Shown piece after piece: positions 1-62,328 of a DNA stretch of 64,000 nucleotides. The DNA is from Octopus sinensis. Taxonomy: Eukaryota. Within the stretch, counting starts at the first letter, position 1. The number at the start of each line of letters is the position of its first letter. The notes beneath the pieces are model-generated. The model was not told where the DNA came from and ran no database searches. It was given only the letters and a program-made list of their open reading frames with translations. The translations under genes and the position numbers were made by a program. Where the stretch lies: the NCBI RefSeq assembly GCF_006345805.1, contig NC_043002.1:18786001-18850000 (forward strand), given 5' to 3'.

Positions 1-785
1 AATGTAGGGAAGATAATAAAGCTAGGAAGAGTTAGAAATTTTTAATAAATATTATAGTTATTGATATTTATTAGGTTGACTATGTTTATGTATTAATAAA
101 AATGTGAGTTAAGAATTTAGCTTGGCATAAGGTGAGAGGGAAATATATAGTAATATTATGTAAGTAATGAGTGTTTCACTTATGTAAGCTTATTGTGCAT
201 TGTATATAAGAAAAATAATTTTTATCTGTTTATGGAGTATGAAATATACAAAAATAATTTATATATAAAAGGAGACTTATAATGGAAAAGAATTCATAGG
301 GCATACTGATTCATTTGCAGAGAACATATCCGCGAAATAGTATACTTGGATTTATGTATTCTAGCAGTTTTTCAAGTTGAATTATTTGAGGGTGTATATG
401 AAAAGAAAGAACAGCGTACAAGACAAATAACCTTACATTGGGCTCGTATCAAAGTACGACAGGCTGAAACAAAGTATTTTATATTTCAAGGCTGGCAGCC
501 AAGACTGCCTGGTATGCGAATAAGAATCAAAGATGGAGTAGAGCAGAACCTCGGAAATTGTAAGTAGCCAAGCGGCGTGTTTACCTCAGGCTACTTTTCA
601 GGCCAAGGGCATCTTGATTATAGGGATTTTACTTTGTCGTTAGGAGGCCCACGTTAACACACAGAGGAACAATTAAAATATAACATATGTGTGTGAGTGT
701 ACGTGTGTGCGTGCGCCCGCATTGACTTTTGGTAAGGACACCGTATTTTGTTTTGTAACCATAACATACTGTGAAGTTGTGAAGA

Positions 786-1005
786 CATGTGGCTTAGTGG
801 TTAGGGTATATTGCACGCAATCGTAGGGTCGCGAGTTCGATTCCCGGCAACGTGTAGTGTCCTTGAGTAAGACACTTTATTTCACGGTGCGCCAATCCTC
901 TCAGCTGGCAAAAATGAGTAGTACCTTATTTCAAAGGGCCGGCCTTGTCACACTCTGAGAAGTATGAAGGGGTACACGTGTCCGTGGAGCGCTCAGCCAC
1001 TTACA
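786..1005 (+). mobile_element. tRNA-derived SINE in protease intron 3 (copies 17295-17533 -, 41533-41753 +)
   Basis: A box (tggcttagtggttagg), B box (gagttcgattccc), body gtgtccttgagtaagacacttt...gccttgtcacactct. Confidence 0.8.
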
Positions 1006-1119
1006 GTTCTTTTTTGCACTATCAAATATAATAACAGCTTCTAAGTAAATGTTGTATCCTATCTTTGGTGTTAGCAGTGCGTTGTTTTCATTTTCAAGTA
1101 TATCTTCTTTCTTTTATTC

Positions 1120-1490
1120 GTTTATTTCTTTCATTTGACTGTGGCCATGCTAGAGCACTGCCCTGAGTCGAAAAAATCGACTCCAGGGTTTATTCTTTGT
1201 AAGCCTAGTACTTATTCTATCGGTCCCTTTTGCCGTACCGCTAATTTACGGGGACGTAAACACGCCAAAATCAGTTGTCAAGCAATGGTGGGGACAATCA
1301 TACACATACACACAGACACACACATACATATACACACAGACACTCCAACACATTTACACAGATACACATATACATATGTACAGATGAGGATAGGCACTTT
1401 GAACAAGTGCCTTCTATTGTTGTACGCGGCCAGTCAAAGCCCTAGAAGTAGATTTGGTAGACAGAAACGGAAACAAGACTACCATATGTA
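1120..1490 (-). mobile_element. Second SINE family body/tail in intron 3 (copies 16815-17185 +, 41870-42235 -, 11455-11640 +, 48170-48345 -)
   Basis: Shared body gacaaccgatgttggtgtgttta...ataagtactaggctta...ggcggtgc-cagcatggcc-cagtcaaatga with an internal (TG)n tract. Confidence 0.75.
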
Positions 1491-1519
1491 TGTATGTAGG
1501 AATGTACATGTACGTATGT

Positions 1520-1765
1520 ATTATGTATCTATCGGGCATGTGGAGTAGTGTGTAAATCGGCAGGAGGACTTAAACGACAAGCAAAGGTACATGAAGCCCA
1601 GTTACAACTACAGCCGACTATTACCAGTATATGTTTTAGTTGCCAATTTTGTACAAGACATTGTAGATCTTTAGCTGGGCTAAAAAGTCACATTCGATCA
1701 CAGCACCAATAACAGTTAAGCTTCGTGCAATGGCCATACTCGATAATGAGGGGGCAGCCATAATG
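1520..1765 (+). mobile_element. RTE-clade LINE 3' end with C2H2 zinc fingers (copy 42270-42510)
   Basis: ACGVVCKSAGGLKR...FSCQFCTRHCRSLAGLKSHIRSQHQ* followed by a short UTR and (TATG)n tail. Confidence 0.65.
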
Positions 1766-1938
1766 TATGTATGTATGTATGTATGTATGTATGTATGTAT
1801 GTATGTATACATGCATGCATGTATGTATGTATGTATGTATGCATGAATGTATGTATGTATGTATGTATGTATGTATGTATGTATGTATGTATGTATGTAT
1901 GTATGTGTGGGTGTGTGGGTGTGTAGTGTGTGTGTGTG

Positions 1939-2163
1939 TATCAAAGAGGGATGCTGAAAAGACCCTGTTTTTAAGGGTTTTCTGGAAGGCCTCGCTGGAG
2001 GCCCAAACTGTCATGTTCTTTTACAAGGTGTAGAATAACTGATGGGCTGCTACAATAAGTGTGTGAATCTGAGAAGGAATATGTTGAATGAAATCATAAT
2101 TAACTGATCCGCCTGTGTATTGATTTTCACCCAAAACAGAGAACCTTTCAGCACCCACTCGTA
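1939..2163. mobile_element. Mariner-type MITE (copies 42724-42948 and 60252-60461)
   Basis: Imperfect TIRs (tacgagtgggtgctgaaagg / tcaaagagggatgctgaaaag) bounded by TA. Confidence 0.65.
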
Positions 2164-2561
2164 TGTATGTATGTATGTATGTATGTATGTATGTATGTAT
2201 GTATGTATGTATGTATGTATACGCATATATATATATATATACATCGTCGTTGTAATCCACATCACTATATTCTGTAGTAGTGACTACCGAGAAATGCTAA
2301 TGCGGATATTCTTTGGTATACAACTTTAATTAAGATAAGAAGATCTAGAATGTCTGAATAATGGCAGCTGGGATAAATACTGATGAAGAAATATCGGTGT
2401 TTAGACATTTCTTGCAGAAACATTAAAATGAAAACACCAAAACCATAGCTATCATATATTGACATTAAATTGCAGTGGATGAAACACTGATATTTACTGA
2501 TAAATGGTGAGAAGAAAGAGAAAATTTATAGGAAAGTGTATGAAGATATTGTAATACACAC

Positions 2562-2689
2562 TTATGAGGTAGGGTTGGTGAACGAAATGTTCATGTGTCA
2601 CATTTTGAATTGCATTTGTAGACTGAGGACCAGGAATCGACAAGTGGTTGGTACCAATATCTACTCTAACTTCTCTGTTACGTCTTTCT
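2562..2689 (-). CDS. Protease A exon 3
   Basis: 128 nt; LERRNREVRVDIGTNHLSIPGPQSTNAIQNVTHEHFVHQPYLI. Confidence 0.88.
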
Positions 2690-5613
2690 CTAAAATCAAA
2701 TAGAATTTACAAAATCTTTAACAGGGAATCATTTTACATCGTCATGTGCATGAAATTCTCCTAGATACTAAAACGTTTGTCTATTCTTTATCGTATTATA
2801 ACATATGTCTCTTTAAACGGCACTGTTATTATCAAAAGTCGTTGTTCATTTAAATACTATCATTCGAACGGTGTCTGTGTTACTAAAATATAATTCTATT
2901 GGTGTTGTTGGTCTGAAAAGTATTATACATACACGAACTAAAATGAGTAATTAACATATGTGGAAGAATGTTCCAAGATTGAAGCGATGTATTTATTTGA
3001 AAAAGGATTTTTTTTAGTTGAAAACCGAATATATCCTTTAACTAAATATCTCAACACGTTTATGGTGAAAGGCAATTATCGGACGTTTCTTGGAAACACA
3101 ATGTTCAATGTGAATTGTAATCTGATATTAAAGCCAGTATATATGTTGGTATATACACTAAATAATTCTTTCCAAACTTTATAGGTTTTTACATCAATAT
3201 ATGACATCAAGTTATGTGAATTATTGATATAAAGACGTCAATATGTACTGTGTATATACTTACAGACAGTGAGCTGCTGTCAATACATGTGTAGAATCAA
3301 TCAAAGTACCACCACATACATTAGAAAATGTAATACCCATGCTACCTTTGGGGCGATCAGATATTGTGAGATGGACAATAGATGGAAATTCGCAGTTAGC
3401 TGCTGGAGATCCACCGACGATCTGTTCGGCAGGTGCTGAAGGAAAATCAGAAAAGAAAATAAATATACATTTTTAGGAGAGTCATTCTTGAATGTCTACA
3501 ATATATCTATTGTGATTTTAATGGTTGTAATTTTGTAACAATTAATTATCAGTTTGTAATTATCGTTTTTATAATGCTCAAGGAAACAATAAAAAATAAT
3601 ATCTGATTTATTTAATTGTTAATATAGTCACTATTCTTTTCTGTGACATCTTTCTAATGCCACGTTCATAAAATTCCTTAAGTTTAGAAGTAAAATATGA
3701 AATTAACTCGTTTTTTAAGCTCAGCTCTGGAAGTAAACCTTAATCCACTCAAACAGTTTTGTAAATTTCTAAAGAGATGGTAATCTATAGGTGTAAGGCA
3801 CGGAGAATATTGTTGGTGGAGCAGAATTTTCCAAGCATATTTTTCAAGGACATCTTTGGACTTTTATGCAGTGTGAGGTCTCGCGTTATCATGATGTAGG
3901 ATGACTCCATTTCTGTTTGTTAATGATGGACGCGTTCTGCTGTAACACTGCTTCCAAACGTCTTAGATGTCGGCAGTATATATTGGCTGTTATTGTTTGA
4001 TTATGCTCAAGCAGTTCGCTATGAATTATTCCACTCACATGCCGCCATACACTCAGAAGCATTCGTTTTGGATTCAGGCCACTTCTAAGCTGCTGAGCTA
4101 GTTCTTCACCATGACTGAACCATAACGTTATTGCTTTACATTATGGTAAAGTATTCACTTTTCATCTCCAGTAATGATTCTATTCAAAGAAGGCATTTTC
4201 AGTTCACGAGATTCCAATGAAGTTGTAGTGATATTATAACGGTGCGCGCTCGCGCACCGTCCATTTGTATTTCGCGCGTGTTGGTGCCTTTACCAAGGCA
4301 GAGAAAGGAAGGGCCCTCTCGCGCATGCGCGAACCACCGGAAGCACGACCCGCTTGCCTATCGTGGTAGTTAGCGAGGCAAGGGGGTCGTAGAACGTTTG
4401 ACCACTAGCAGCAGCAAGCGGCGACTTGGGACCCAGCGATTGAAGGCGGCGGTCACGCATATATTCTCTCCGGTTGATAGCAGCCGGCCGAATGCCTTTA
4501 ACCAAATTGTTGCCGACCACATTCAACTTCCCTGTTCGACGCCATCTTGACCCCTTTCTGGTTTAGCGGCTAAATATTGTAAATATTACAATCGATTAAC
4601 TTTCAGCCTTGCGCGCCCCGAACCAAGGACATCAGATAACACACTTATTGTTATTGTTACCAAGAAAGAGAATAAAGTAGTAATATATATTTTACGTCTG
4701 CGTCTTGTTGTTTCTGACGGGCAGAGATTCTGGATTATTAAAGCAACGGCTAGTGAGTGATTGCTTTCTTGTACCCCGAAAGTACAAGATCAGATATTCA
4801 CATCACTCACACTAAGTTCGTTTCAAAGTGCAGTAGTCGACACGTTGTTTGTAACTGTCTGCAAAGAGACCATGTGGGACCCATTTTCCCACCTTTGTCA
4901 CTTAACCAAGCCTTTTCAATTCACGATCGATGAATGATCGTATGGCTCACAGTGAAGTTCATGCCTAATTCCTGAACTGTATTAGTCTGGTTTGCTTCAA
5001 CAGTGGCTTGCAATGCACCATACCGAACACACTTGGACGCCCTAATCTTGATTGATCCTGCAGGCTGTAGTCATCGTATCCGAATCGTTAAAACCATTTT
5101 CTGAGTGATCTTTCAGTCATTCCGCTATCACTATAAGTGTTTTGCGGGAATTTTGTTTCTAAACTTGCATTATTTCCTTTTTGAAATTTATAAAGAAAAG
5201 CGTTCTTTGCTAGGAGTGAACACGGGGCCAATATAACAACATTAATTATGACAAGCTTGAACAAATCTGAAAGAAAAGGAAAAGTAATTATTCATCAATG
5301 ATTTCGTCGCATTTCAACTAGAACTGAGAAGTTAAACACCTTTAAATTAAACTAGATATTTACTTTAAGAAAAACGGACAGAAGTTTCGCTACAATGTGA
5401 TATATTTAAAAAATCAGTTTCAAATTATCTTTTCATATGAAATTATTGATTTAAAAATGTATGAAGAATTCACTGAAACCAGTATTAACAAAGATATCAA
5501 CCGGAATGCGGACGACATTTGAAGTTTCATCATGGAAAACCCCTCGTCCGGAGATATGACTTACCAGCAAAAACTGAAGCAACCGTAACAAGAAGGCAAC
5601 ACAGAGACAACAA
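2562..5613 (-). CDS. S1A chymotrypsin-like serine protease, copy A (exons 1-3 in window; remainder runs off left edge; start codon is TTG, possibly non-functional)
   Basis: Exons 5613-5565, 3435-3264, 2689-2562 with GT-AG sites in phase. Translation (L)[33 protein letters not shown]...[17 protein letters not shown] contains catalytic His57. Confidence 0.85.
3264..3435 (-). CDS. Protease A exon 2 (IVGG, TAAHC)
   Basis: 172 nt, cag/gtaag; PAEQIVGG...[32 protein letters not shown]. Confidence 0.92.
3547..5400 (-). mobile_element. Decayed mariner in intron 1 of A (interrupted by solo LTR)
   Basis: Reverse complement of the B intron 1 mariner. Confidence 0.75.
4224..4825. mobile_element. Solo LTR, 602 bp, specific to copy A
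   Basis: TG...CA termini, 4-bp TSD AAGT (4220-4223 and 4826-4829); empty site ccaatg-aagt-gcag in B; CpG-rich. Confidence 0.8.
5565..5613 (-). CDS. Protease A exon 1 (signal peptide, ATG>TTG)
   Basis: GCCACC-TTG-TTGTCT..., 49 nt, donor gtaag; paralogs B, C and D have GCCACC/ACCACC-ATG. Confidence 0.8.
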
Positions 5614-13956: not shown

Positions 13957-13993
13957 TATAAATACTACGCTCTCCATAACTCTAGCATCAGTT
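13957..13993 (+). promoter_or_regulatory. TATA box + Inr of protease B
   Basis: TATAAATA at 13957-13964 and TCAGTT at 13988-13993, canonical spacing, about 28 nt before the ATG. Confidence 0.7.
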
Positions 13994-14017
13994 CAATCTT
14001 TCTACACCAGTGCCACC

Positions 14018-14066
14018 ATGTTGTCTCTGTGTTGCCTTCTTGTTACGGTTGCTTCAGTTTATGCTG
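14018..14066 (+). CDS. Protease B exon 1
   Basis: GCCACCATG Kozak, hydrophobic signal peptide, donor gtaag at 14067. Confidence 0.92.
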
Positions 14067-17000
14067 GTAAGTCATATCTCCGGACGAGGGGGTTTTCCGT
14101 GATGAAACTTCAAAAGTCGTCTGCATTCCGGTTGATATCTTTGTTAATACTGGTTTCAGTGAATTCTACATACATTTTTAAATCATTAATTTCATATGAA
14201 AAGATAATTTGAAACTGATTTTTTAAATATATCACATTGTAGCGAAACTTCTGTCCATTTTTCTTAAAGTAAATATCTAGTTTAATTTAGGTGTTTAACT
14301 TCTCAGTTCTAGTTGAAATGCGACGAAATCATTGAAGAATAATTACTTTTCCTTTTCTTTCAGATTTGTTCAAGCTTGTCATAATTAATGTTGTTATATT
14401 GGCTCCGTGTTCACTCCTAGCAAAGAACGCTTTTCTTTATAAATTTCAAAATGGAAATAATGCAAGTTTAGAAACAAAATTCCCGCAAAACACTTATAGT
14501 GATAGCGTAATGACTGAAAGATCACTCAGAAAATGGTTTTAACGATTCGGATACGATGACTTCAGCCTGCAGGATCAATCAAGATTAGGACGTCCAAGTG
14601 TGTTCGGTCCTGGTGCATTGGAAGCCACTGTTGAAGCAAACCAGACTAATACGGTTCAAGATTTAAGTATGGACTTCACTGTGAGCCATACGATCATTCA
14701 TCGATCGTGAATTGAAAAGGCTTGGTTAAGTGACAAATGTGGGAAAATGGGTCCCACATGGTCTCTTTGCAGACAGTTACAAACAACGTGTCGACTGCTG
14801 CACTTCATTGGAATCTCGTGAACTGAAAATGCCTTCTTTGAATAGAATCATTACTGGAGATGAAAAGTGAATACTTTACCATAACGTAAAGCAATAACGT
14901 TATGGCTCAGTCATGATGAAGAACTAGCTCAGCAGCTCAGAAGTGGCCTGAATCCAAAACGAATGCTTCTGAGTGTTTGGCAGCATGTGAGTGGAATAAT
15001 TCATAGCGAACTGCTTGAGCATAATCAAACAATAACAGCCAATATATACTGCCGACATCTAAGACGTTTGGAAGCAGTGTTACAGCAGAACGCGTCCATC
15101 ATTAACAAACAGAAATGGAGTCATCCTACATCATGATAACGCGAGACCTCACACTGCATAAAAGTCCAAAGATGTCCTTGAAATATATGCTTGGAAAATT
15201 CTGCTCTACCAACAATATTCTCCGTGCCTTACACCTATAGATTACCATCTCTTTAGAAATTTACAAAACTGTTTGAGTGGATTAAGGTTTACTTCCAGAG
15301 CTGAGCTTAAAAAACGAGTTAATTTCATATTTTACTTCTAAACTTAAGGAATTTTATGAACGTGGCATTAGAAAGAGGTCACAGAAAAGAATAGTGACTA
15401 TATTAACGATTAAATAAATCAGATATTATTTTTCAATGTTTCCTTGAGCATTATAAAAACGATAATTACAAACTGATAATTAATTGTTACAAAATTACAA
15501 CCATTAAAATCACAATAGATATATTGTAGACATTCAAGAATGACTCTCCTAGAAATATATATATATTTTCGTTTCTGATTTTCCTTCAGCACCTGCCGAA
15601 CAGATCGTCGGTGGATCTCCAGCAGCTAACTGCGAATTTCCATCTATTGTCCATCTCACAATATTTAATCAGCCCACAGATAACATGGTTAGTCTATGTG
15701 GTGGTACTTTGATTGATTCTACACATGTATTGACAGCAGCTCACTGTCTGTAAGTATATACACACTACATATTGACGTCTTTATATCAATAATTCACATA
15801 ACTTGATGTAATATATTGATGTAAACACCTATAAAGTTTGGAAAGAATTATTTAGTGTATATACCAACATATATACTGGCTTTAATATCAGATTACAATT
15901 CACATTGAACATTATGTTTCCAAGAAACGTCCGATAATTGCCTTTCACCATTCTTCACATATTATGTTAATTACCCATTTTAGTTCGTGTATGTATAATA
16001 CCTTTCAGACCAACAACACCAATAGAATTATATTTTAGTAACACACACAGACTGTTCGAATAATAGTATTTAAATGAACAACGACTTTTGATAATAACAG
16101 TGCCGTTTAAAGAGACATATGTTATAATACGATAAAGGATAGACAAACGTTTTAGTATCGAGGAGAATTTCAAGCACATGACGATGTAAAATGATTACCT
16201 GTTAAAGATTATGTAAATTCTATTTGATTTTAGAGAAGGTCATGTCAGAAAAGTTAGAGTAAATATTGGTACCAACGACAAGCGGATTCGTGGTCCTCAG
16301 ACAACAAATGCTATTCAAATTATGAGTCATGAACATTACGTTCACCAACCCTACCTCATACGTGAGTATTACAATATCTTCATACACTTTCTTATAAATT
16401 TTCTCTTTCTTCTCACCATTTATCAGTAAATATCAGTGTTTCATCCACTGCAATTTAATGTCAGTATATCATAGCTATTGTTTTGGTGTTTTCATTTTAG
16501 TGTTTCTGCAAGAAATGTCTAAACACCGATATTTCTTCATCAGTATTTATCCCAGCTGCCATTATTCAGTCATTCTAGATCTTCTTATCTTAATTAAAGT
16601 TGTATGCCAAAGAATATCCGCATTAGCATTTCTCGGTAGTCACTACTACAGAATATAGTGATGTGGATTACAACGACGATGTATATGTATATATGCGTAT
16701 ACATACATACATACATACATACATACATACATACATACATACATACATACATACATACATACATACATACATACATACATACATACATACATACATGTAC
16801 ATTCCTACATACATACATATGGTAGACTTGTTTCCGTTTCCATCTACGAAATCTAATTGCAGGGATTCGATTGGCCGCGTACAACAATAGAAGGCACTTG
16901 CTCAAAGTGCCTATCCTCATCTGTACATATGTGTGTATGAACATGTGTATGTGTATGTGTGTCTGTGTGTATGTGTATGTGTGTATGTGTGTATGTGTAT

Positions 17001-20000
17001 GTGTGTCCCCATCATTGCTTGACAACCGATGTTGGTGTGTTTACATCTCCTTAAAATAGCGGTACGGCAATAGGGGCCGATAGAATAAGTACTAGGCTTA
17101 CGAAGAATAAGCCCTGGAGTCGATTTGTTCGACTAAGGGCAGTGCTCTACTATGGCTATAATCAAATGAAAGAAATAAACGAATAAAAGAAAGAAGATAT
17201 AATTGAAAAGGAAAACAACGCACTGCTAACACCAAAGATAGGATACAACATTTACTTAGAAGTTGTTATTATATCTGATAGTGCAAAAAAGAACTGTAAG
17301 TGGCTGAGCGCTCCACGGACACGTGTATCCCTTCATACTTCTCATGGAGATTCGGCGTGACACAGAGTGTGACAAGACCGGCCCCTTGAAATAAGGTACT
17401 ACTCATTTTTGCCAGCTGAGAGGATTGGCGCACCGTGAAATAAAGTGTCTTGCTCAAGGACACTACACGTTGCGGGAATCGAACTCGCGACCCTACGATC
17501 GCGTGCCATATACCCTAACAACTAAACCACATGTCTTCACAACTTCACAGTATGTTATGTTAACAAAAATACGGTGTCCTTACCAAAAGTCAATGCGGGC
17601 GCACGCACGCACACACACATGCACGCACACACACTCACACACACACTCACACACATATGTTATATTTTAATTGTTCCTCCGTGTGTTAACGTGGGCCTCC
17701 TAACGGCAAAGTAAATCCATATAATCAAGATGCCCTTGGCCTGAAAAGTAGCCTGAGGTAAACACCCCGCTTGGCTATTTACAATTTCCGAGGTTCTGCT
17801 CTACTCCATCTTTGATTCTTATTCGCATACCAGGCAGGCTTGGCTGCCAGCCTTGAAATATAAAATACTTTGTTTCAGCCTGTCGTACTTTGATACGAGC
17901 CCAATGTAAGGTTATTTGTCTTGTACGCTGTTCTTTCTTTTCATATACACCCTCAAATAATTCAACTTGAAAAACTGCTAGAATACATAAATCCAAGTAT
18001 ACTATTTCGCGGATATGTTCTCTGCAAATGAATCAGTATACACTATGAATTATTTTCCATTATAAGTCTCCTTTTATATATAAATTATTTTTGTATATTT
18101 CATACTCCATAAACAAATAAAAACTATTTTTCTTATATACAATGCACAATAAGCTTACATTAGTTAAACACTCATTACTTACATAATATTACTATATATT
18201 TCCCTCTCACCTTATGCCAAGCTAAATTCTTAACTCACATTTTTATTAATACATAAAAGGAAAGCATGGACATGCAGCCTACAAGAAACCCTCAGAATCT
18301 TTCCAGCTTGAACTTCCATAAGGCAAACTGGAAACAAATTGAGAAAGAGATCCTCAAACAACTGGCCTGAATGTCCTCCTCGCCAGACATCGACGTGAAA
18401 CTTCAACAATTCATGTCTGTAATACAAGCCATATGCTACAAATGTGTCCCAGAGAGAAAGGCCACTGTACACAAGAAAAAATCCACAGAAAGAGGAAAAT
18501 TTTAATGAGACGGCGTACAAAAATTTCAAATCGCCTAAACAAACAAATTGAAAGCAGTGAAAAGTCCCGCCTGAAAATAAAACTGTTGGAAATTGAAAAA
18601 TGTCTGCAACTCTTCCATGAAAAGGAAAGAACAGACATAGAAGCCTGGACTATAGACAACATATAATCTAACCCCAGAGCTTTCTACAGGTATGCCAAAG
18701 AAACAGCTACGGTGCACTGTAGGATAGGGCCACTCCTTGAAAAGGATGGCACACTCACAGGAAAACCAATGAGGGTAAGTGAAATACTGAATGAGCAATT
18801 CAAGAGTGTTTTCACCCCACCCTTTGGGCATTTCCAAATCAGCAATCCAACTGACTTCTTCACCACTGTAGATATGGGGTCAGAGGCGGCGATGATTGAT
18901 TACATCAATATGAAGGAAGACGATGTAATAAAGGCTATAGATGAAATGAAAACAGACTCAGCTACTGGCCCCGATGGATTCCCGGCAATCCTCCTAAAAG
19001 TATGTAACAGAGTCCTAGCAAGACCACTGCAGTTCCTCTTTCAGAGCTTCCTTGCAGCTGGCAAACTTCCAAGAAAACTGAAGGATGGTAAAATATGCCC
19101 TATTCATAAAGGAGGTAGCAGAGCGGAGGCCAAGAACTACAGACCTATCTCTCTGACCTCACACATCAGCAAGGTCATGGAACGAATAGTCAGAAGGAAA
19201 CTGATCACCTTCCTTGAAGAAAATGACTTGCTGACACCCAAGATGGTTTCCGACCAGGGAGAAGCTGCTTAACTCAGCACCTACAACACTATGACTGGGT
19301 GCTGAAACGACTGCTCAACCACTCAAATGTGGAAGTGATATATCTCGACTTTGCAAAGGCCTTTGATAAAGTCGATCATGGAATGATATGTCACAAACTG
19401 CGTGATCTCAGCATAGTTGGAAAACTGGGAGAATGGCTTCATGACTTTCTGAAAGATAGAATTCAGGTGGTAGTAGCCAATGGGGCCACTTCCATTAACA
19501 CGCAAATAGTGAGCGGTGTTTCGCAGGGCACTGTTTTGGGACCACTACTGTTCATAATGGCCCTCTCAGACATGCCCTCAGCCACGCAGAGAGCCACGAT
19601 CACAAGTTATGCAGATGATACAAAAGTTTCACAGGCAATACAGAACCCTGAGGACACTAAACGCCTGCAATGTGAGCTGGACAAAATATACAAGTGGGCT
19701 GAAAAGAATAGCATGCAGTTCAATCTGAAAAGTTTCAAGCTTTATACTATCAGCATGCAAACTAAATGCAATACCCAATGAATACCTGGACCCGGAGGAA
19801 TTGCAATCCCAGAGGCACAATCAGTGCGTGACCTGGGTATTACACGAGTGATGACGCAAACTTTCGTGTACATGTTGCTAAATTGGCAATGAAATGTAGA
19901 CGACTGGCCGGATGGATTCTCAGAACCTTTAGAACAAGAGAACAAGAAACCATGATGGTCCTCTGGAGGACACTTGTCCTAAGCCACTTTGACTATTGCT

Positions 20001-21725
20001 CTCAGCTATGGTCACCATCCAGTGTCAAGTTGATCACAGAACTTGAGGCGATCCAACGTAGCTACACGAAGAAGATAGCCTCTATGAAGAATATAAGCTA
20101 CTGGGAAAGACTCAAGAGATTAAAACTCTATTCCTTGGAGCGTAGGCGAGAAAGATATGCCATAATATACATCTGGAAGATCCTGGAGGGACTTGTCCCA
20201 AACTTTGGCATCGAGAGTTACACAAATGCCAGAACTGGGCGCCACTGCGTGGTGCATAGGACTCCAAATTTGCCATCAAGATGTAGGACAAGATACTGTG
20301 ATAGCCTGGGCTTCCGAGGCCCACAGTTCTTCAATATCCTCCCGAAGAACCTAAGAGACCTGCATGGGGTGGATGCAGATGTCTTTAAAATGAAACTGGA
20401 TCTCTTCCTGTCAGGTATCCCAGATGAACCAACTTCACGGCAGGAGGTGCAGATGAGGGCAGCTGCATCGAACTCTCTCATGCACCAAATGGCAGTTGCT
20501 AAAAAGCATTCGTGAAGTAAAACCATGTAGCAATACCAAATGGCGGTGCCCCAGCATGGCCACAGCTCATGAGCTGAAACTATAATCAATCAATCAATCA
20601 ATCATAGTCAACCCAATAAATATCAATAACTATAATATTTATTAAAAATTTCTAACTCTTCCTAGCTTTATTATCTTCCCTACATTATTAATTTTCAGTC
20701 TTACAATATCTATTATACCTCTGAACGTTCTTTTAATTTTTATATCCACAGCAAATATTTACTATTTTAATTCTGTAATATTAACAACTAATTTTCCTAT
20801 TTTAATTTTTTTTACCTTATATTTAATACGCACAAATGAATATAAGTTCTTACAGTAACACATTTCCATTATATGTAGCTCTTGAAATATTTTTATTAAC
20901 TCTTGTTCTCGTTGCATTCTAGCAGCCTACTATATAAATACATCCACTAGTTTAAATACATTCTCACACACAATTTTTGTTTTTAAATATACACCATATC
21001 TAATATTACTTAAAACTGTCAAATGATATCCTCATTCAAACATAATTATGCTTTTCCATTGGACACCTCTATTAAACTCCTATAATGAATGACTTATTTG
21101 GAGCTTGAATTACTTATCTACTTACTCTTCTATAGAGGGAACGTCTCTTAAACATTTTTTCACTCAAATTTTCAAATAACCGTTAACTGCATCAGTTTTA
21201 GTTTATACACAGCTAGACTCACATTCTTTAGCATGTTCTCAATTGTTTCATATGGATAAAATACACATATCCGAATTTGTTATCTGCTATCTCATTCATC
21301 AAGTCTACTGTAATAATAAAAATTTTCTGTTGTATACTTGTTGCACTGAGAAGAACAATGATATGTAATTACTTTAATTTAATCAAATTAGTTTTAATTT
21401 TTCTACCATGCATTTACATGATAATATCGCTGTTTGAAACGATCGTACGGTGCATTAAAAAACTTCTCTTCTCAATTTATTGAGTTTCTATTAGATACCT
21501 TTCCATAAATTCTCATAACACATCATATATAAGTAATATTTTCATATTCGCATAAATCCTACGCCAGTAAACTACCAGCAAAATATGAAGTATTTTTGTT
21601 AGAAATCGCCCTTTTGAGCCCTCCAAAGTAAAGGATGAAATATAATTCGACCTTTTCACATACGCGCACACTCTCTCTCACACACACATGTATATGTATG
21701 TATGTATATATATATATACATACAT

Positions 21726-21803
<78 letters not shown>

Positions 21804-21833
21804 GATATATATATATGTATGTATTATATATAT

Positions 21834-21877
<44 letters not shown>

Positions 21878-22805
21878 TAGATATATATATATATATATAT
21901 GACATACATACATATATATTCGCCTCTAATGCATAACAAGCTGGCATTTATATCCATTTTATACCTATTTTATTTTTGAAGAGAACGACATCGCCATATT
22001 GACTTTGAGCAGACCAGTCCGTGAAGTAGGATGTGTGAAATTTGCAACTATGGCCTATCCAGGAGAAACATTTGATCATAAAAGATGTATCGCTGCTGGA
22101 TGGGGAAATCTCTTTTGTAAGTATCAATATAGTTTCATCAAACATTCTTATTTGAATTAAATTGTTGTTGATCGATATTAATCATCACTCGATTTGTACT
22201 CCTTTCAGTCAAAGGAAATAGCCCTAACGAATTATATAAAGTGGCCCTTCCAGCTATTCCCCATGCTGTTTGTAAAAGAAGATCTAGGATGCGAATTGTT
22301 GACGGAATTCTTTGTGCCGGGGATTTCAGACCAGGTGGAGCATCTACTTGCCAGGTATACAGTATTGATACTATAGTATATACCTGTTTTAATATCTCAC
22401 TGATGCATCTCTCTATCTGTTGAACATACTTTTAGATGTGAGTGTGTGTGCGCGTGCGCGCGCGCGCGCGTGTGTGTATGCGTATTAATGCAATGATATC
22501 GGACACATTTTCAATTTAGTGAAAAGAAAACTGTTTATCACAATAAGAAAAGTACCCTGTTGTATATGTTGAACAAAAAATTATATTTCGTAAAATAATT
22601 CAACATCTGTGAATTTCAAGAACAATATATAGATATATTGTTTGTGTTTTCGTAGGGTGACTCTGGTGGTCCACTTTATTGTCCAAGATCAAATGGTGAA
22701 ATGGTGTTGGCAGGAGTAACATCTTTTGGACATAAATGTGAAAGACATATCAGTGCTTTCAGCGACGTCGGATATTTCCGAAACTGGATCGATAGGCACA
22801 CGTGA
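14018..22805 (+). CDS. S1A chymotrypsin-like serine protease, copy B (intact, 6 exons, 255 aa)
   Basis: Exons 14018-14066, 15590-15749, 16234-16361, 21982-22116, 22209-22354, 22656-22805 total 768 nt with consistent phases. Signal peptide [25 protein letters not shown] (His57), NDIAIL (Asp102), TCQGDSGGP (Ser195), VTSFG; AATAAA at 22876. Confidence 0.95.
14232..15480 (+). mobile_element. Decayed mariner transposon in intron 1 of B (copy in C 44337-45580)
   Basis: ITGDEK, HDNARPH and YSP motifs with stops; tattaggttg TIR-like end in C; absent from D intron 1 (about 250 bp). Confidence 0.8.
15590..15749 (+). CDS. Protease B exon 2
   Basis: PAEQIVGG...[28 protein letters not shown]. Confidence 0.95.
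16234..16361 (+). CDS. Protease B exon 3
   Basis: [43 protein letters not shown]; tttag/gtgag. Confidence 0.9.
18258..20602 (+). mobile_element. 5'-truncated CR1-group LINE inserted in intron 3 of B only
   Basis: [38 protein letters not shown]; one stop and two frameshifts; (TCAA)n tail; empty site atacataaa|catagtc in A and C. Confidence 0.92.
21982..22116 (+). CDS. Protease B exon 4
   Basis: [12 protein letters not shown]...[10 protein letters not shown]. Confidence 0.95.
22209..22354 (+). CDS. Protease B exon 5
   Basis: [16 protein letters not shown]...[16 protein letters not shown]. Confidence 0.95.
22656..22805 (+). CDS. Protease B exon 6
   Basis: [10 protein letters not shown]...[30 protein letters not shown]. 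Confidence 0.95.
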   Translation, partial: GDSGGPLYCPRSNGEMVLAGVTSFGHKCERHISAFSDVGYFRNWIDRHT

Positions 22806-31380: not shown

Positions 31381-31394
31381 TCACCTGATGTCAA

Positions 31395-38701: not shown

Positions 38702-38851
38702 TCACGTGTGTCTATCGATCCAGTTTCGGAAATATCCGACGTCGCTGAAAGCACTGACATCTGTCTCACAATTATATCCAAAAGATGTTACTCCTGCCAA
38801 CACCATTTCACCATTTGATCTTGGACAATAAAGTGGACCACCAGAGTCACC
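38702..38851 (-). CDS. Protease C exon 6
   Basis: GDSGGP...[29 protein letters not shown]. Confidence 0.95.
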   Translation of the reverse strand, partial: GDSGGPLYCPRSNGEMVLAGVTSFGYNCETDVSAFSDVGYFRNWIDRHT

Positions 38852-39567
38852 CTACAAAAACACAAATAATATATCTATATATTGTTCTTGAAATTCACAG
38901 ATGTTGAATTATTTTACGAAATATAATTTTTTGGTCAAGTTACACAACAGGGTAAATTTCTTATTGTGATAAACAGTTTTCTTTTCACTACATTGAAAAT
39001 GTGTCCGATATCTTTGCATTAATACACACACACACAGACACACACTCAAACACACACACACACACACACACATCTAAAATGTGCATCAGTGAGATATTAA
39101 AATAGGTATATACTATAGTATCAATACTGTATACCTGGCAAGTAGCTGCTCCACCTGGTTTGAAATCCCCGGCACAAAGAATTCCTTCAGCAATTCGCAT
39201 CCCAGATCTTCTTTTACAAACATCATGGGGAATAGCTGGAAGGGCCACTTTATATAATTCGTGAGGGCTATTTCCGTTGACTGAAAGGAATACAAATCGA
39301 GTGATGATTAATATCGATCAACAACAATTTAATTCAAATATGAATATTTGATGAAACTATATTGATACTTACAAAAGAGACTTCCCCATCCAGCAGCGAT
39401 ACATCTTTTATGATCAAATGTTTCTCCTTGATTGGCCATAGTTGCAAATTTCACACATCCTTCTTCACGGACTGGCCTGCTCAAAGTCAATATGGCGATG
39501 TCGTTCTCTTCAAAAATAAAATAGGTATAAGATAGATATAAATGCCAGCTTGTCATGCATTAGAGAC

Positions 39568-39650
<83 letters not shown>

Positions 39651-41371
39651 TGTGTGTGTGTGTGTGTGTGAAAAGGTTGAATTATATTTCATCCTTTACT
39701 TTGGAGGGTTCCAAAGGGCGATTCCTAACAAAAATATTTCATATTTTGCTGGTAGTTTACTGGCGTAGGATTTATGCGAATATGAAAATATTACTTATAT
39801 ATGATGTGTTATGAGAATTTATGGAAAGGTATCCAATAGAAACTCAATAAATTTGTTAGAAATGGAGAAGAGAAGTATTTAAATACATCGTACGATCGTT
39901 TCAAACAGCGATATTATCATGTAAATCCATGGTAGAATAATTAAAACTAATTTGATGAAATTAAAATAATTAGATATCATTGTTCTTCTCAGTGCAACAA
40001 GTATACAACAGAAAATTATTATTATTACAGTAGACTTGATGAATGAGATAGCAGATAACAAATTCGGATATGTGTATTTTATCCATATGAAACAATTGAG
40101 AGCATACTAAAGAATGTGAGTCTAGCTGTGTATAAACTAAAACTGATGCAGTTAACGGTTATATGAAAATTTGAGTGAAAAAATGTTTAAGAGACGTTCC
40201 CTCTATAGAAGAGTAAGTAGCTAAATAATTCAAGCTCTAAATAAGTCATTCGTTATAGGAAGTTTAATAGAGGTGTCCAATGGAAAAGCATAATTATGTT
40301 TGAATGAGGATATCATTTGACAGTTATAAGTAAAGTAGATACGGTGTATATTTAAAAACAAAAATTGTGTGTGAGAATGAATTTAAGCTAGAGGGATTAT
40401 TTAAATAGTAGGCTGCTAGAATGCAACGAGAACAACAGTTAATATAAATATTTCAAGAGCTATATATAATGGAAATGTGTTACTGTAAGTACTTATATTC
40501 ATTTGTGTGTATTAAATATAAGTTAACAAAAAAATTAAAATAGGAAAATTAGTTGTTAATATTACAGAATTAAAATAGTAAATATTGCTGTGGCTATAAA
40601 AATTAAAAGAACTTTCAGAGGTATAATAGATATTGTAAGAACGTTCAGAGGTATAATAGATATTGTAAGACGAAAATCAATAATGTAGGGAAGATAATAA
40701 AGCTAGGAAAAGTTAGAAATTTTTAATAAATGTTATAGTTATTGATATTTATTAGGTTGACTATGTTTATGTATTAATAAAAATGTGAGTTAAGAATTTA
40801 GCTTGGCATAAGGTGAGAGGGAAATATATAGTAATATTATGTAAGTAATGAGTGTTTAACTAATGTAAGGTTATTGTGCATTGTATATAAGTAAAATAAT
40901 TTTTATCTGTTTATGGAGTATGAAATATACAAAAATAATTTATATATAAAAGGAGACTTATAATGGAAAAGAATTCATAGTGTATACTGATTCATTTGCA
41001 GAGAACATATCTGCGAAATAGTATACTTGGATTTATGTATTCTAGCAGTTTTTCAAGTTGAATTATTTGAGGGTGTATATGAAAAGAAAGAACAGCGTAC
41101 AAGACAAATAACATTACATTGGGCTCGTATCAAAGTACGACAGGCTGAAACAAAGTATTTTATATTTCAAGGCTGGCAGCCAAGACTGCCTGGTATGCGA
41201 ATAAGAATCGAAGATGGAGTAGAGCAGAACCTCGGAATTTGTAAGTAGCCAAGCGGCGTGTTTACCTCAGGCTACTTTTCAGGCCAAGGGCATCTTGATT
41301 ATAGGGATTTTACTTTGTCGTTAGGAGGCCCACGTTAACACACAGAGGAACAATTAAAATATAACATATGT

Positions 41372-41460
<89 letters not shown>

Positions 41461-42509
41461 CGCCCGCATTGACTTTTGGTAAGGACACCGTATTTTGTTT
41501 TGTAACCATAACATACTGTGAAGTTGTGAAGACATGTGGCTTAGTGGTTAGGGTATATTGCACGCGATCGTAGGGTCGCGAGTTCGATTCCCGGCAGCGT
41601 GTAGTGTCCTTGAGTAAGACACTTTATTTCACGGTGCGCCAATCCTCTCAGCTGGCAAAAATTAGTAGTACCTTATTTCAAGGGGCCGGCCTTGTCACAC
41701 TCTGAGAAGTATGAAGGGGTACACGTGTCCGTGGAGCGCTCAGCCACTTACAGTTATTTTTTGCACTATCAAATATAATAACAGCTTCTAAGTAAATGTT
41801 GTATCCTATCTTTGGTGTTAGCAGTGCGTTGTTTTCATTTTCAAGTATATCTTCTTTCTTTTATTCGTTTATTTCTTTCATTTGACTGTGGCCATGCTAG
41901 AGCACTGCCCTTAGTCGAACAAATCGACTCCAGGGTTTATTCTTTGTAAGCGTAGTACTTATTCTATCGGTCCCTTTTGCCGTACCGCTAATTTACGGGG
42001 ACGTAAACACACCAAAATCAGTTGTCAAGCAATGGTGGGGACAATCATACACATACACACAGAAACACACATACATATACACACAGACACTCCAACACAT
42101 TTACACAGATACACATATACATATGTACAGATGAGGATAGGCACTTTGAACAAGTGCCTTCTATTGTTGTACGCGGCCAGTCAAAGCCCTGGAAGTAGAT
42201 TTGGTAGACAGAAACGGAAACAAGACTACGATATGTATGTATGTAGGAATGTACATGTACGTATGTATTATGTATCTATCGGGCATGTGGAGTAGTGTGT
42301 AAATCGGCAGGAGGACTTAAACGACAAGCAAAGGTACATGAAGCCCAGTTACAACTACAGCCGACTATTACCAGTAAATGTTTTAGTTGCCAATTTTGTA
42401 CAAGACATTGTAGATCTTTAGCTGGGCTAAAAAGTCACATTCGATCACAGCACCAATAACAGTTAAGCTTCGTGCAATGGCCATACTCGATAATGAGGGG
42501 GCAGCCATA

Positions 42510-42542
<33 letters not shown>

Positions 42543-45500: not shown

Positions 45501-45792
45501 AACTGAGAAGTTAAATACCTTTAAATTAAACTAGATATTTACTTTAAGAAACACGGACAGAAGTTTCGCTACAACTTGATATATTTAAAAAATCAGTTTC
45601 AAATTATCTTTTCATATGAAATTAATGATTTAAAAATGTATGTAGAATTCACTGAAACCAGTATTAGCAAAGATATCAACTGGAATGCAGACGACATTTG
45701 AAGTTTCATCACGGAAAACCCTTCGTCCGGAGATATGACTTACCAGCAAAAACTGAAGCAACCGTAACAAGAAGGCAACACAGAGACAACAT
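38702..45792 (-). CDS. S1A chymotrypsin-like serine protease, copy C (intact, 6 exons, 259 aa)
   Basis: Exons 45792-45744, 44225-44054, 43478-43351, 39507-39373, 39280-39135, 38851-38702 in phase; full His/Asp/Ser triad; ATG intact. Confidence 0.95.
39135..39280 (-). CDS. Protease C exon 5
   Basis: [16 protein letters not shown]...ILCAGDFKPGGAATCQ. Confidence 0.95.
39373..39507 (-). CDS. Protease C exon 4
   Basis: [44 protein letters not shown]. Confidence 0.95.
43351..43478 (-). CDS. Protease C exon 3
   Basis: LERRNREVRVDIGTNRLSIPGPQSTNAIKNVTHEDFVHQPYLI. Confidence 0.9.
44054..44225 (-). CDS. Protease C exon 2
   Basis: IVGG...SDRPKGSMGITFANVCGG...TAAHC, 172 nt. Confidence 0.95.
45744..45792 (-). 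CDS. Protease C exon 1
   Basis: [16 protein letters not shown]. Confidence 0.92.
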
Positions 45793-61370: not shown

Positions 61371-62328
61371 TTCATTTGTCGTGGTTTGCAAATTATATTT
61401 GCTAAATTTTCACATATTTTCTACAGCTATAACTGATCCAGTGTTAGGTGTAGCTAAATAAGATAATTTAAGAGTGGATAAGTTAAAGATTGAGTGCTAC
61501 TTATGCTGCGGTGGAAAATTTTATTTAATAAAGCCGAATAACTGCTTAAGTACTCCCTCATCGTTTAAAGAGAAGTTGGGTGTATACTAAATAATATTTA
61601 TTCTCCTGCTTTTATTGGGTAATCGTAAGGGCCATGGTATTCGTGTTCCGACTGCATATCTGGGATATGTTTTCATCCCAGGATTATCTATCGTAAGAGT
61701 TTCTTGGGCTTTAGATTAGACGGAAGGACTTGTTGAGTGGATTGTTTGTTATGGATTATCCTATCTCTAGTCGGGTAGGTAATGGTCATAATTTCGGAGA
61801 GGGTAGAATTAGGATCCAGCAACGCTAAATAATAGTTAAGCTTACTGTTAGGTAAGAATTTCATTGCTGAGCACTGCAATTATGTTTGAATATATAAATT
61901 CCATGCTCTAAACGAACACCAATACCAATTATTTGCCGGATTATTAGTTCGTTTTAATGTATATGTACTCTCTCAATGATAAACGACATGTAGCCATTCA
62001 TTGCTAGGTGGCTGCATCAACACTTTGTCTTAGATGCAGTTCAAGTTGGAATTTCCTGAGGTAAGTCAATCCAAGCTCTTATTATATTCTTTAAGTAAAT
62101 ACCTCCCCCCTGTTTAAAGTTAAATGCAATATATCCTATGTTTGCTGTAAACACAAAAATTCAATGTAATTTTTATCTGTTATTAAAACCAGTCTATCTG
62201 TTAGTATTTACACCAAATAATTCTTTTCAATATTTATATTATACAAACATGGAATCTGAATCTTCTTCATGATTATCAAACAATGTTTGTATCGCGAAGA
62301 CGTCTATATGCACTGTGTGTATACTTAT

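What the first reader, a model, noticed from the sequence alone, without database searches (positions are those of the whole stretch)
16234..16680. Exons evolve about ten times faster than flanking introns: strong positive-selection signature
Manual B vs C count for exon 3: 24 differences in 128 nt (about 19%), giving 17 amino-acid changes and only 1 purely silent codon. The next about 320 nt of intron 3 differ at about 6 sites (about 2%). Exon 4 has 4 aa changes and 1 silent, exon 5 has 8 and 0, exon 6 has 5 and 2. Changes cluster in surface loops (60s, 70s, 170s, 217-225), and A and C gain an N-glycosylation sequon (NVT) that B lacks. Exon-over-intron acceleration is the established pattern of snake venom enzyme genes. 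Intron-biased gene conversion could add to the contrast.
Basis: partly seen in the sequence, partly recalled or inferred. Interest (0 to 1): 0.8.

Follow-up and report, generated by a model that had tools for sequence, protein, structure and literature searches.

The report
Fast-changing exon in octopus venom-protease paralogs
Three neighbouring copies of an octopus salivary-gland (venom-type) serine protease gene differ mostly by amino-acid-changing mutations in the loops around the active site, a real but moderate sign of adaptive divergence; the "ten times faster than introns" contrast is inflated by gene conversion between the copies.

Summary
The window is Octopus sinensis. It holds three paralogous six-exon S1 serine protease genes (A, B, C) of the cephalopod salivary/venom-gland family, plus a dead fragment (D). 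The flagged span is exon 3 of copy B and the start of intron 3.

B and C differ at 24 of 128 exon-3 bases, giving 17 amino-acid changes and one silent codon. They differ at 5 of the next 320 intron bases.

The "ten times" figure pairs the most divergent exon with one of the least divergent intron stretches. Masked non-coding divergence is 4.2% across the locus. That makes exon 3 about 4.4 times faster and all exons together 1.75 times faster. Exons 4-6 match the introns.

Positive selection is supported, but moderately. In the paralog clade ω is 1.7-2.7, against 0.32 for the family background. A branch-site test gives p = 0.0004-0.002. The lineage leading to C has 23 non-synonymous and 0 synonymous changes. 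No conserved core position changed.

Gene conversion is a major confounder. Copy A is a B/C chimera. In O. sinensis a ~2 kb stretch of A, including exon 3, has been overwritten by the C type. Intron 3 holds a 9-11% divergent island, and synonymous divergence is higher in exon 3 than elsewhere.

This is a new example of a known venom-gene pattern.

The parts
14018..14066 (+). Copy B exon 1 (start codon and signal peptide)
   Evidence: Matches residues 1-16 of P0001, followed by a GT donor.
15590..15749 (+). Copy B exon 2. It carries the activation site (Gln|IVGG), the 37-loop and His57.
   Evidence: AG/GT splice sites and open frame. The loop patch differs from A/C by 11 substitutions and a 12-nt indel. 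Eight of the 11 are derived on the A/C lineage, using D as outgroup.
16234..16361 (+). Copy B exon 3, the flagged exon. It encodes chymotrypsin positions about 59-100 (the 60, 70-80 and 90s loops).
   Evidence: 24/128 differences from C, dN 0.25, dS 0.076. Identical in O. vulgaris B. Numbering.
16362..16680 (+). First ~320 nt of B intron 3, an unusually similar stretch
   Evidence: 5/317 unmasked differences from C, in the lowest 1% of non-coding windows. Only 2 B-specific sites in 300 nt.
16856..17210 (+). High-divergence non-coding island in intron 3 (SINE-like sequence beside microsatellites)
   Evidence: 8-14 differences per 100 sites among the A_vul, B and C types, against a locus mean of 2.6-3.9.
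18258..20599 (+). Retrotransposon (reverse transcriptase) insertion in B intron 3, absent from A and C
   Evidence: Gap in the alignments. Pfam RVT_1, E = 4.5e-19. Also present in O. vulgaris B.
21982..22116 (+). Copy B exon 4 (Asp102)
   Evidence: 5/135 differences from C.
22209..22354 (+). Copy B exon 5 (170s loop, residue 189)
   Evidence: 8/146 differences from C, all non-synonymous.
22656..22805 (+). Copy B exon 6 (Ser195, 220-loop, stop codon)
   Evidence: 7/147 differences from C.
38702..45792 (-). Copy C, an intact six-exon gene. Exons: 45792-45744, 44225-44054, 43478-43351, 39507-39373, 39280-39135, 38851-38702.
   Evidence: Its orthologue is O. vulgaris P0002.
2562..5613 (-). Copy A, exons 1-3 only (5613-5565, 3435-3264, 2689-2562). 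The gene runs off the left end of the window. There is no ATG at the canonical start.
   Evidence: Exons 4-6 correspond to P0122, outside the window.
706..2785 (-). Gene-conversion tract in copy A of O. sinensis (C type replaces A type). It covers exon 3 and about 1.9 kb of intron 3.
   Evidence: A_sin agrees with C against A_vul at 82 of 84 informative sites. A_sin to A_vul identity is 85-90% in two windows there (exon 3 and the SINE island), while A_sin to C is 97-99%.
62328..62474 (-). Fragment D, exon 2 of an older paralog and probably dead
   Evidence: tblastn hit. About 77% non-coding identity to A/B/C. The Cys58 codon reads Ser and the donor GT reads AT. No exons 3-6 were found in the window.

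Best explanation
The flagged span is exon 3 and the start of intron 3 of copy B. B is one of three closely related, inverted or tandem S1 (chymotrypsin-fold) serine protease genes of the cephalopod posterior-salivary-gland (venom-gland) family in Octopus sinensis.

Shown:
- B and C are intact secreted-type proteases. They have the catalytic triad, the cysteines, a signal peptide and GT-AG introns.
- All three copies predate the O. sinensis / O. vulgaris split.
- The copies differ mainly by amino-acid-changing substitutions in the loops ringing the active site (37, 60, 70-80, 90s, 148, 170s, 220). Exon 3 is the hot spot and exists in three versions: B, C and the O. vulgaris A type.
- Most B/C changes arose on the lineage leading to the C type, before speciation, and none of them was synonymous.

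Inferred:
- After duplication, selection for altered substrate, inhibitor or target recognition drove a burst of replacements in these loops.
- Gene conversion and recombination among the copies keep most of the remaining sequence, introns and exons 4-6 alike, at about 4% divergence.
- The very large exon-3-versus-intron contrast is therefore the product of three things: (i) real ω > 1, about 2-3 times; (ii) a deeper coalescence of exon 3, which escaped or resisted homogenisation, as did a nearby intronic island; and (iii) comparison with an exceptionally similar intron stretch.
- Conversion can also move exon 3 as a unit, as in C to A in O. sinensis.
For: Identity:
- P0001 is 100% identical (O. 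sinensis). The nearest named relatives are SP1-Abd-7 and SP1-Oct-1 from venom-gland transcriptomes.
- Pfam Trypsin, E = 2.6e-44.
- Exon structure is conserved in four other genes.

Rates:
- Exon 3 is 18.8% against 4.2% for masked non-coding sequence.
- Nei-Gojobori for B-C: dN 0.092, dS 0.048. Non-synonymous against non-coding gives p = 1.6e-4.

Codon maximum likelihood (my own GY94 code):
- Background ω is 0.32 and clade ω is 2.7. One ratio against a clade ratio gives p = 2e-8. Clade ω = 1 is rejected at p = 0.0135. Stem-C ω = 1 is rejected at p = 0.003.
- Branch-site test: 2Δl = 9.6 (p = 0.0019) for all post-duplication branches, 12.4 (p = 0.0004) for stem C, and none for stem B.

Polarisation:
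- C stem 23 N: 0 S. B stem 10 N: 1 S.
- In the exon-2 loop, 8 of 11 changes and a 12-nt insertion are derived on the A/C stem, against 1 change on that stem in 607 flanking non-coding sites.

Core constraint is kept:
- None of 57 invariant or near-invariant family columns differs between B and C, against 44 of 198 others.

Conversion:
- A is a mosaic.
- A_sin carries a C-type tract at 82/84 sites.
- Non-coding divergence is overdispersed, with an island.
- Exon-3 dS is 0.08-0.13, against 0.01-0.03 in exons 4-6.
- B is equally distant from C_sin and C_vul, so there has been no B-C conversion since speciation.
Against: - The test for ω > 1 weakens to p = 0.07-0.09 when copy A is included on a single tree.
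- Pairwise non-synonymous against synonymous for B-C is not significant (Fisher p = 0.14). There are only about 161 synonymous sites.
- Branch-site tests are known to be inflated by multi-nucleotide changes and by recombination, and both are plausible here. Seven codons have two hits against 4 expected (p = 0.08).
- The codon models are my own implementation, not codeml or HyPhy.
- Expression in the salivary gland and any toxic or digestive role of these particular copies were not tested. The literature says the function of cephalopod venom serine proteases has not been assayed (PMC7656900).
Confidence: 0.68

Rival explanations
1. Mosaic history alone. The paralogs are much older than the ~4% intron divergence suggests. 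Gene conversion has repeatedly homogenised most of the locus. Exon 3, like the intron-3 island, is simply a segment that escaped and evolved at about the neutral rate (ω near 1, relaxed constraint after duplication). No adaptive change is involved.
For: - Conversion tracts and a chimeric copy A are documented.
- A non-coding island reaches 9-11%, and the maximum non-coding 128-site window is 15-19 against 16-24 for exon 3.
- For a three-type tree, dS in exon 3 is about 0.14. That is close to the island (about 0.13) and about 3 times the locus mean.
- ω > 1 is only marginal with eight taxa.
Against: - On the C stem there are 23 non-synonymous and 0 synonymous changes, which has a probability of about 0.003 under neutrality.
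- Branch-site p = 0.0004-0.002.
- dN in exon 3 (0.15-0.25) exceeds both its own dS and the island divergence.
- Changes wholly avoid 57 conserved columns, so the genes are not drifting freely.
- B and C keep open frames and splice sites in two species.
Confidence: 0.2
2. Segment replacement. The divergent patches (the exon-2 loop with its 12-nt insertion, and the dense clusters in exon 3) arose in one or a few mutational events. These could be short-tract conversion from an unsampled divergent paralog, template switching, or ASSET-like segment switching. They would not be many independently selected point substitutions.
For: - The changes are tightly clustered. One example is 8-11 substitutions and a 12-nt insertion within about 48 nt, flanked by identical sequence.
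- Runs of 5-6 changes within 9 nt occur in exon 3.
- Exon 3 does move between copies as a unit.
- ASSET is described for surface segments of snake venom serine proteases (PMC2711939).
Against: - None of the roughly 35 closest family homologues inspected carries the A/C-type loop or exon-3 motifs.
- The exon 3 sequences of B and C share derived residues against all outgroups, so they are each other's closest relatives.
- Multi-hit codons are not significantly in excess (7 against 4, p = 0.08).
- The O. vulgaris A type is intermediate, which suggests stepwise change.
Confidence: 0.1
3. Pseudogene decay. The copies are dying duplicates, and the excess of replacements only reflects loss of function.
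For: - Copy A lacks an ATG at the canonical start in both species.
- Its O. sinensis 3' half is annotated as a low-quality protein.
- D is a dead fragment.
Against: - B and C have intact ORFs, splice sites, the catalytic triad and all cysteines in both species.
- No conserved column has changed.
- Free decay would give uniform divergence of about 4%, not 19% in one exon.
Confidence: 0.02

Closest known systems
Cephalopod-specific posterior-salivary-gland (venom-gland) S1 serine proteases, the 'SP1' sequences of Ruder et al. 2013 (PMID 23456102). Expansions described in PMC7656900.
   Same: - The best named hits are SP1-Abd-7 and SP1-Oct-1, at 75-76% identity over the full length.
- The length is the same, about 255 aa, and the six-exon structure is the same in O. 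bimaculoides and O. sinensis relatives.
- They are tandemly expanded, as the literature reports.
   Different: - Published family-wide analyses describe mostly negative selection on coleoid venom proteins, serine proteases included (PMC4619613). My background ω of 0.32 agrees with that.
- This young trio shows an episodic ω of 1.7-2.7.
- Gland expression of these copies was not tested here.
Accelerated evolution of snake venom gland serine protease and PLA2 genes, where exons diverge faster than introns and dN exceeds dS (summarised in PMC2711939 and PMC6062510).
   Same: - Duplicated secreted enzymes.
- Replacements concentrated in surface loops near the substrate cleft.
- dN above dS, and an exon more divergent than its introns.
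   Different: - Only exon 3 and the exon-2 loop exceed the introns. Exons 4-6 do not.
- The contrast is partly produced by gene conversion among the copies.
- This is an independent molluscan recruitment of the fold.
[quoted passage not shown]
   Same: - Short surface segments are radically different while flanking exon and intron sequence stays above 95% identical.
- One segment carries a 4-residue insertion.
- Exon 3 is exchanged between copies.
   Different: - The segments here are still recognisably homologous, and an intermediate version exists.
- No unrelated replacement sequence or donor was found.
Concerted evolution with selection-maintained islands, as described for some multigene families such as MHC and other immune or venom gene clusters (general knowledge).
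   Same: - Kilobase-scale conversion tracts.
- Chimeric copies.
- Divergent functional segments embedded in homogenised flanks.
   Different: Whether selection actively opposes conversion at exon 3 is not shown. In O. sinensis, exon 3 of copy A was in fact converted.

Membership tests
Peptidase S1 (chymotrypsin fold) | Significant match to the Trypsin domain profile over its full length | tested here: met
   PF00089, E = 2.6e-44, profile positions 1-220 of 220. PDB sequence hits to trypsins, chymotrypsin C, factor IX and kallikrein at about 1e-27.
Peptidase S1 (chymotrypsin fold) | Catalytic triad His57, Asp102 and Ser195, and an N-terminal IVGG activation motif | tested here: met
   TAAHC, NDIAIL, GDSGGP and IVGG are present in B and C, and in A as far as the window reaches. 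They align to chymotrypsinogen positions 57, 102, 195 and 16.
Peptidase S1 (chymotrypsin fold) | Conserved disulfide cysteines and the two-barrel fold | tested here: met
   Cysteines align with chymotrypsinogen C42, C58, C122, C136, C168, C182, C191, C201 and C220. The AlphaFold model has mean pLDDT 87.5 and pTM 0.85 and is strand-rich. No fold search was run.
Cephalopod posterior-salivary-gland (venom) serine protease clade | Closest relatives are the cephalopod-specific gland sequences | tested here: met
   All of the top 57 hits are cephalopod or unnamed sequences. They include SP1-Abd, SP1-Oct, SP1-Par and SP1-Sep entries and the O. kaurna S1 peptidases.
Cephalopod posterior-salivary-gland (venom) serine protease clade | Expression in, and secretion from, the posterior salivary gland, and an effect on prey | not testable with these tools
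   No expression data are on hand. No transcript contig carries exactly B or C. The literature states that the function has not been assayed (PMC7656900).
Accelerated (positively selected) venom gene evolution | dN/dS significantly above 1 on paralog branches | tested here: met
   Stem C against ω = 1 gives p = 0.003. Branch-site p = 0.0004-0.002. C stem 23 N: 0 S. However, p is 0.07-0.09 with copy A included, and the pairwise Fisher test gives p = 0.14.
Accelerated (positively selected) venom gene evolution | Exons diverge faster than introns across the gene | tested here: not met
   Exon 3 is 18.8% and exon 2 is 7.5%, but exons 4, 5 and 6 are 3.7, 5.5 and 4.8%, against 4.2% for non-coding sequence.
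Accelerated (positively selected) venom gene evolution | Synonymous divergence matches intron divergence, so the contrast is not due to different coalescence depth | tested here: inconclusive
   Gene-wide dS is 0.048, close to the non-coding 0.042-0.048. In exon 3, dS is 0.076-0.133, against 0.011-0.032 in exons 4-6. Each estimate rests on only 1-3.5 changes.
Concerted evolution / gene conversion among tandem paralogs | Phylogenetic incongruence along the locus, and paralogs closer than orthologues in some tracts | tested here: met
   Copy A groups with B upstream and with C downstream. In the exon-3 window, A_sin to C_sin is 97.2% while A_sin to A_vul is 89.6%; in the SINE-island window the values are 98.8% and 85.4%. 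82 of 84 informative sites agree. Variance/mean of non-coding differences is 1.5-2.3.
ASSET-type segment switch | An exon segment replaced by a sequence unrelated to the original | tested here: not met
   The divergent segments remain alignable codon by codon, and an intermediate exists in O. vulgaris A. No donor was found among the homologues.

The most novel reading that the evidence does not exclude
Exon 3, which encodes the 60, 70-80 and 90s loops, behaves as a hypervariable specificity cassette. Diversifying selection keeps three distinct versions among otherwise homogenised paralogs. Gene conversion occasionally transfers a whole cassette between copies, as in C to A in O. sinensis. Octopus venom-protease repertoires would then evolve by shuffling a selected exon on a conserved scaffold. 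This would be a molluscan parallel to the segment-switching proposed for snake toxins, and a case of renewed 'expansion-phase' evolution in an ancient venomous lineage that is thought to be under purifying selection.
Probability: 0.3. Interest if true: 0.55.

Novelty: new member of a known kind. Interest (0 to 1): 0.4.

Why it matters
Cephalopod salivary serine proteases dominate gland expression in non-tetrodotoxin octopods. Their function has not been assayed, and family-wide studies report mainly purifying selection.

This trio is shared by O. sinensis and O. vulgaris. It gives a young, genomically resolved case in which episodic positive selection and gene conversion can be separated. It also points to which loops probably set target specificity: 37, 60, 70-80, 90s and 220, plus residues 189, 190 and 192 in the pocket.

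The case is also a methodological warning. Exon-versus-intron contrasts between tandem paralogs can be strongly inflated by conversion mosaics.

Tried and rejected
- **Distant donor for exon 3.** I looked for evidence that B's exon 3 was imported from another paralog. The roughly 35 closest of the 833 homologues found were read, and none carries the A/C-type or B-type patches. B and C also share derived residues.
- **D as an outgroup for exon 3.** D has only exon 2 in the window. It was useful for polarising exon 2.
- **Raw non-coding divergence.** This was inflated by microsatellites. Intron 5 appeared to be 9-12%. I masked simple repeats and gap edges, which brought the figure from 4.75% to 4.2%.
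- **Multi-nucleotide mutation excess.** Seven multi-hit codons against 4 expected, p = 0.08, not significant.
- **Loop enrichment from predicted secondary structure.** 29 of 43 mature-protein differences lie in non-regular structure, against roughly 55% of residues. This is only a modest enrichment. Avoidance of conserved columns is the stronger signal.
- **Ruder et al. 2013.** The paper is not held in the library. What I say about it rests on its citation in PMC4619613 and PMC4280546 and on my own memory.
- **Not attempted.** I did not run a fold search, expression evidence, codeml or HyPhy, GENECONV or GARD. The last four are not installed.
Full report
**What is in the window**

A self-comparison shows three large homologous segments: window 1 to about 6,900 (copy A, gene on the minus strand), 11,400-23,258 (copy B, plus strand) and 38,249-48,418 (copy C, minus strand). 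A fourth, older fragment (D, about 77% identity) lies near 62,100-63,300.

Stop-to-stop translation and splice-site inspection give copy B six exons: 14018-14066, 15590-15749, 16234-16361, 21982-22116, 22209-22354 and 22656-22805. All introns are GT-AG and the ORF is an intact 255 codons. The product is 100% identical to an annotated Octopus sinensis protein. Its nearest named relatives are the SP1 sequences from coleoid posterior venom-gland transcriptomes, at 75-76% identity. It is a full-length Trypsin-domain protein (Pfam E = 2.6e-44). It has His57, Asp102, Ser195, the IVGG N-terminus and the standard cysteines.

Copy C is likewise intact. Copy A runs off the left edge after exon 3.

**Checking the observation**

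Every count was reproduced for B against C.
- Exon 3 differs at 24 of 128 nt (18.8%).
- The next 320 nt of intron 3 differ at 5 sites (1.6%).
- Exons 4, 5 and 6 have 4+1, 8+0 and 5+2 amino-acid and silent changes.
- The NVT sequon is present in A and C and absent from B and all outgroups.
- Aligned to bovine chymotrypsinogen, whose residue index is the standard numbering, the changes fall in the 37, 60, 70-80, 90s, 148, 170s, 185-189 and 217-224 regions.

After masking microsatellites and gap edges, non-coding divergence between B and C is 309/7307 = 4.2%. It is fairly even across introns, at 3.3-6.2%. The binomial probability of 24 or more differences in 128 sites is 9e-10. No non-coding 128-site window reaches 24; the maximum is 19.

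The headline "ten times" does not generalise. All exons together are 7.4%, or 1.75 times non-coding. Exons 4-6 are 3.7-5.5%, indistinguishable from non-coding. The 320-nt intron stretch used as comparator lies in the lowest 1% of non-coding windows. The 12-fold ratio therefore splits into 4.4 times (exon 3 against average non-coding) and 2.7 times (average non-coding against that stretch).

**Orthologues and timing**

The O. vulgaris chromosome carries all three copies in the same order: C_vul = P0002, B_vul = P0123 and A_vul = P0121. Orthologous non-coding divergence is 1.3% for B and 1.9% for C, against 3.9-4.1% between B and C. B is equally distant from C_sin and C_vul: 265 B-specific, 74 C_sin-specific and 64 C_vul-specific sites. 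The duplication therefore predates speciation, and B and C have not converted each other since.

B's exon 3 is identical in the two species. C's differs at 5 nt, giving 4 replacements and 0 silent whole-codon changes.

**Is it positive selection?**

Nei-Gojobori for B against C gives dN 0.092 and dS 0.048 (ω 1.9). For exon 3 alone, dN is 0.25 and dS 0.076. With only about 161 synonymous sites, the direct non-synonymous against synonymous test is not significant (p = 0.14). Non-synonymous against non-coding is significant (p = 1.6e-4).

I extracted coding sequences for three outgroups: an O. bimaculoides gene, a second O. sinensis paralog and a transcript contig. I fitted Goldman-Yang codon models with code of my own.
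- The family background ω is 0.32.
- Branches after the B/C duplication have ω 2.7. One ratio is rejected at p = 2e-8, and ω = 1 at p = 0.0135.
- On the branch leading to C the estimate runs to the upper bound, and ω = 1 is rejected at p = 0.003.
- A branch-site mixture gives 2Δl = 9.6 (p = 0.0019; 15% of sites at ω about 5) for all post-duplication branches. It gives 12.4 (p = 0.0004) for stem C and nothing for stem B.
- Parsimony polarisation agrees: 23 non-synonymous and 0 synonymous changes on the C stem, and 10:1 on the B stem.
- In exon 2, with D as outgroup, 8 of 11 changes and a 12-nt insertion arose on the A/C lineage within about 48 nt. Only one A/C-lineage change occurred in 607 flanking non-coding sites.

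None of the 57 invariant or near-invariant columns of a 40-sequence family alignment differs between B and C, while 44 of 198 other positions do. The proteins are therefore still constrained, and simple decay is excluded.

There are caveats. Adding A_vul and B_vul on a single tree lowers the clade ω to 1.7, with p = 0.07-0.09 against ω = 1. Recombination and multi-nucleotide changes can inflate branch-site tests. Multi-hit codons number 7 against 4 expected (p = 0.08).

**Gene conversion is central, not peripheral**

- Copy A groups with B upstream of exon 2 and with C from exon 4 onward, in both species.
- Exon 3 exists in three versions: B, C and a distinct O. vulgaris A type.
- In O. sinensis, copy A carries the C version. 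Across window 2785-706, A_sin agrees with C against A_vul at 82 of 84 informative sites. This is a ~2 kb conversion tract that includes exon 3. Conversion is therefore not biased towards introns.
- Non-coding differences are overdispersed (variance/mean 1.5-2.3).
- An island in intron 3 (16856-17210, SINE-like sequence next to microsatellites and a 667-nt indel) shows 8-14 differences per 100 sites among the three types. For A_vul against C_vul, its maximum 128-site window (19) equals exon 3 (19).
- Synonymous divergence in exon 3 is 0.076-0.133, several-fold higher than in exons 4-6 (0.011-0.032). It is similar to the island, although it rests on 2-3.5 changes.

The simplest reading is this. 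Most of the locus was homogenised after the original duplications. Exon 3 and the island retain older divergence. Within exon 3, replacements still outnumber the neutral expectation about two-fold.

**Mechanism proposed**

After duplication, selection favoured new recognition surfaces around the active-site cleft. The changes were mainly on the C lineage: the 37-loop insertion, recharging of the 60-loop, remodelling of the 70-80 loop, a new N-glycan site at position 88, and the 220-loop. The catalytic core was conserved throughout.

Later, species-specific changes even touch the S1 pocket. Residue 189 is Ser to Ala in C_sin. Residues 190 and 192 differ in C_vul and A_vul.

Gene conversion homogenises scaffold and introns and occasionally transfers exon 3. 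The observed changes are shown. The selective agent (prey substrates or inhibitors) is inferred.

**Comparison with what is known, and novelty**

The pattern is the classic one for snake venom PLA2 and serine protease genes, and it resembles ASSET in its segmental character (PMC2711939, PMC6062510).

For coleoids, published work reports expansions of gland serine proteases with untested function (PMC7656900). It also reports predominantly negative selection, within a 'two-speed' model that allows episodic bursts (PMC4619613). This locus is a concrete genomic example of such a burst, entangled with concerted evolution.

I rate it a new member of a known kind, with interest 0.4.

**Other features**

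Other features of the window and the related O. vulgaris loci are listed under Noticed in passing.

Noticed in passing
window 5611-5613 (minus strand); L006 12371-12373: Copy A has no ATG at the canonical start codon in either O. sinensis or O. vulgaris; the codon reads Leu. The O. vulgaris annotation uses an odd upstream start without a signal peptide. The O. sinensis 3' half (P0122, outside the window) is flagged as a low-quality protein. A may be non-functional or may use another first exon.
   Followed up: partly
window 62328-62474 (minus strand): Fragment D holds exon 2 of an older paralog. Its Cys58 codon reads Ser and its splice donor GT reads AT. Exons 3-6 are not in the window. O. vulgaris has the same fragment, and also a second D-like copy with intact Cys58 beyond copy A (L006 19950-20096 and 21602-21724).
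   Followed up: partly
window 18258-20599; 31392-32843; 14885-15133: A retrotransposon piece (Pfam RVT_1) is inserted in intron 3 of B only and is shared with O. vulgaris B. A 74% identical copy lies between B and C. A mariner-type transposase remnant (Transposase_1) lies in intron 1.
   Followed up: partly
window 47086-56090; 23382-24493 and 54853-55951: About 9 kb upstream of C has no counterpart at the orthologous O. vulgaris junction (L001 about 8707). The segment contains a 94.7% identical copy of the sequence just downstream of B.
   Followed up: no
window 39135-39160 (C exon 5, minus strand); L001 and L006 exon 5: Residues of the S1 specificity pocket differ between very close sequences. 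Position 189 is Ser in B, C_vul and A_vul but Ala in C_sin. Position 190 is Thr against Val, and position 192 is Gln against Lys, in C_vul and A_vul. With Gly216 and Ser226 the pocket is chymotrypsin- or elastase-like, not trypsin-like.
   Followed up: partly
window 15590-15615: The predicted activation cleavage is after Gln (AEQ|IVGG; ETQ|IVGG in relatives), not after Lys or Arg as in most S1 zymogens. This suggests an unusual activating protease for this family.
   Followed up: no
window 15315-15615 (B coordinates); C 44500-44200: Just upstream of exon 2, C_sin is the odd one out. C_sin to C_vul is 93.7%, while B and A to C_vul are 98%. This suggests another conversion or replacement tract specific to C in O. 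sinensis.
   Followed up: no
window 16680-16800; 42279-42946; 1532-2161: A (TACA)n microsatellite in B intron 3 sits where A and C carry about 0.65 kb of extra sequence. This homology break borders the high-divergence island and may limit the spread of conversion tracts.
   Followed up: no
window 36669-38072 and 53929-54815: Inverted-repeat (palindrome-like) structures appear in the self-comparison. Their nature was not examined.
   Followed up: no
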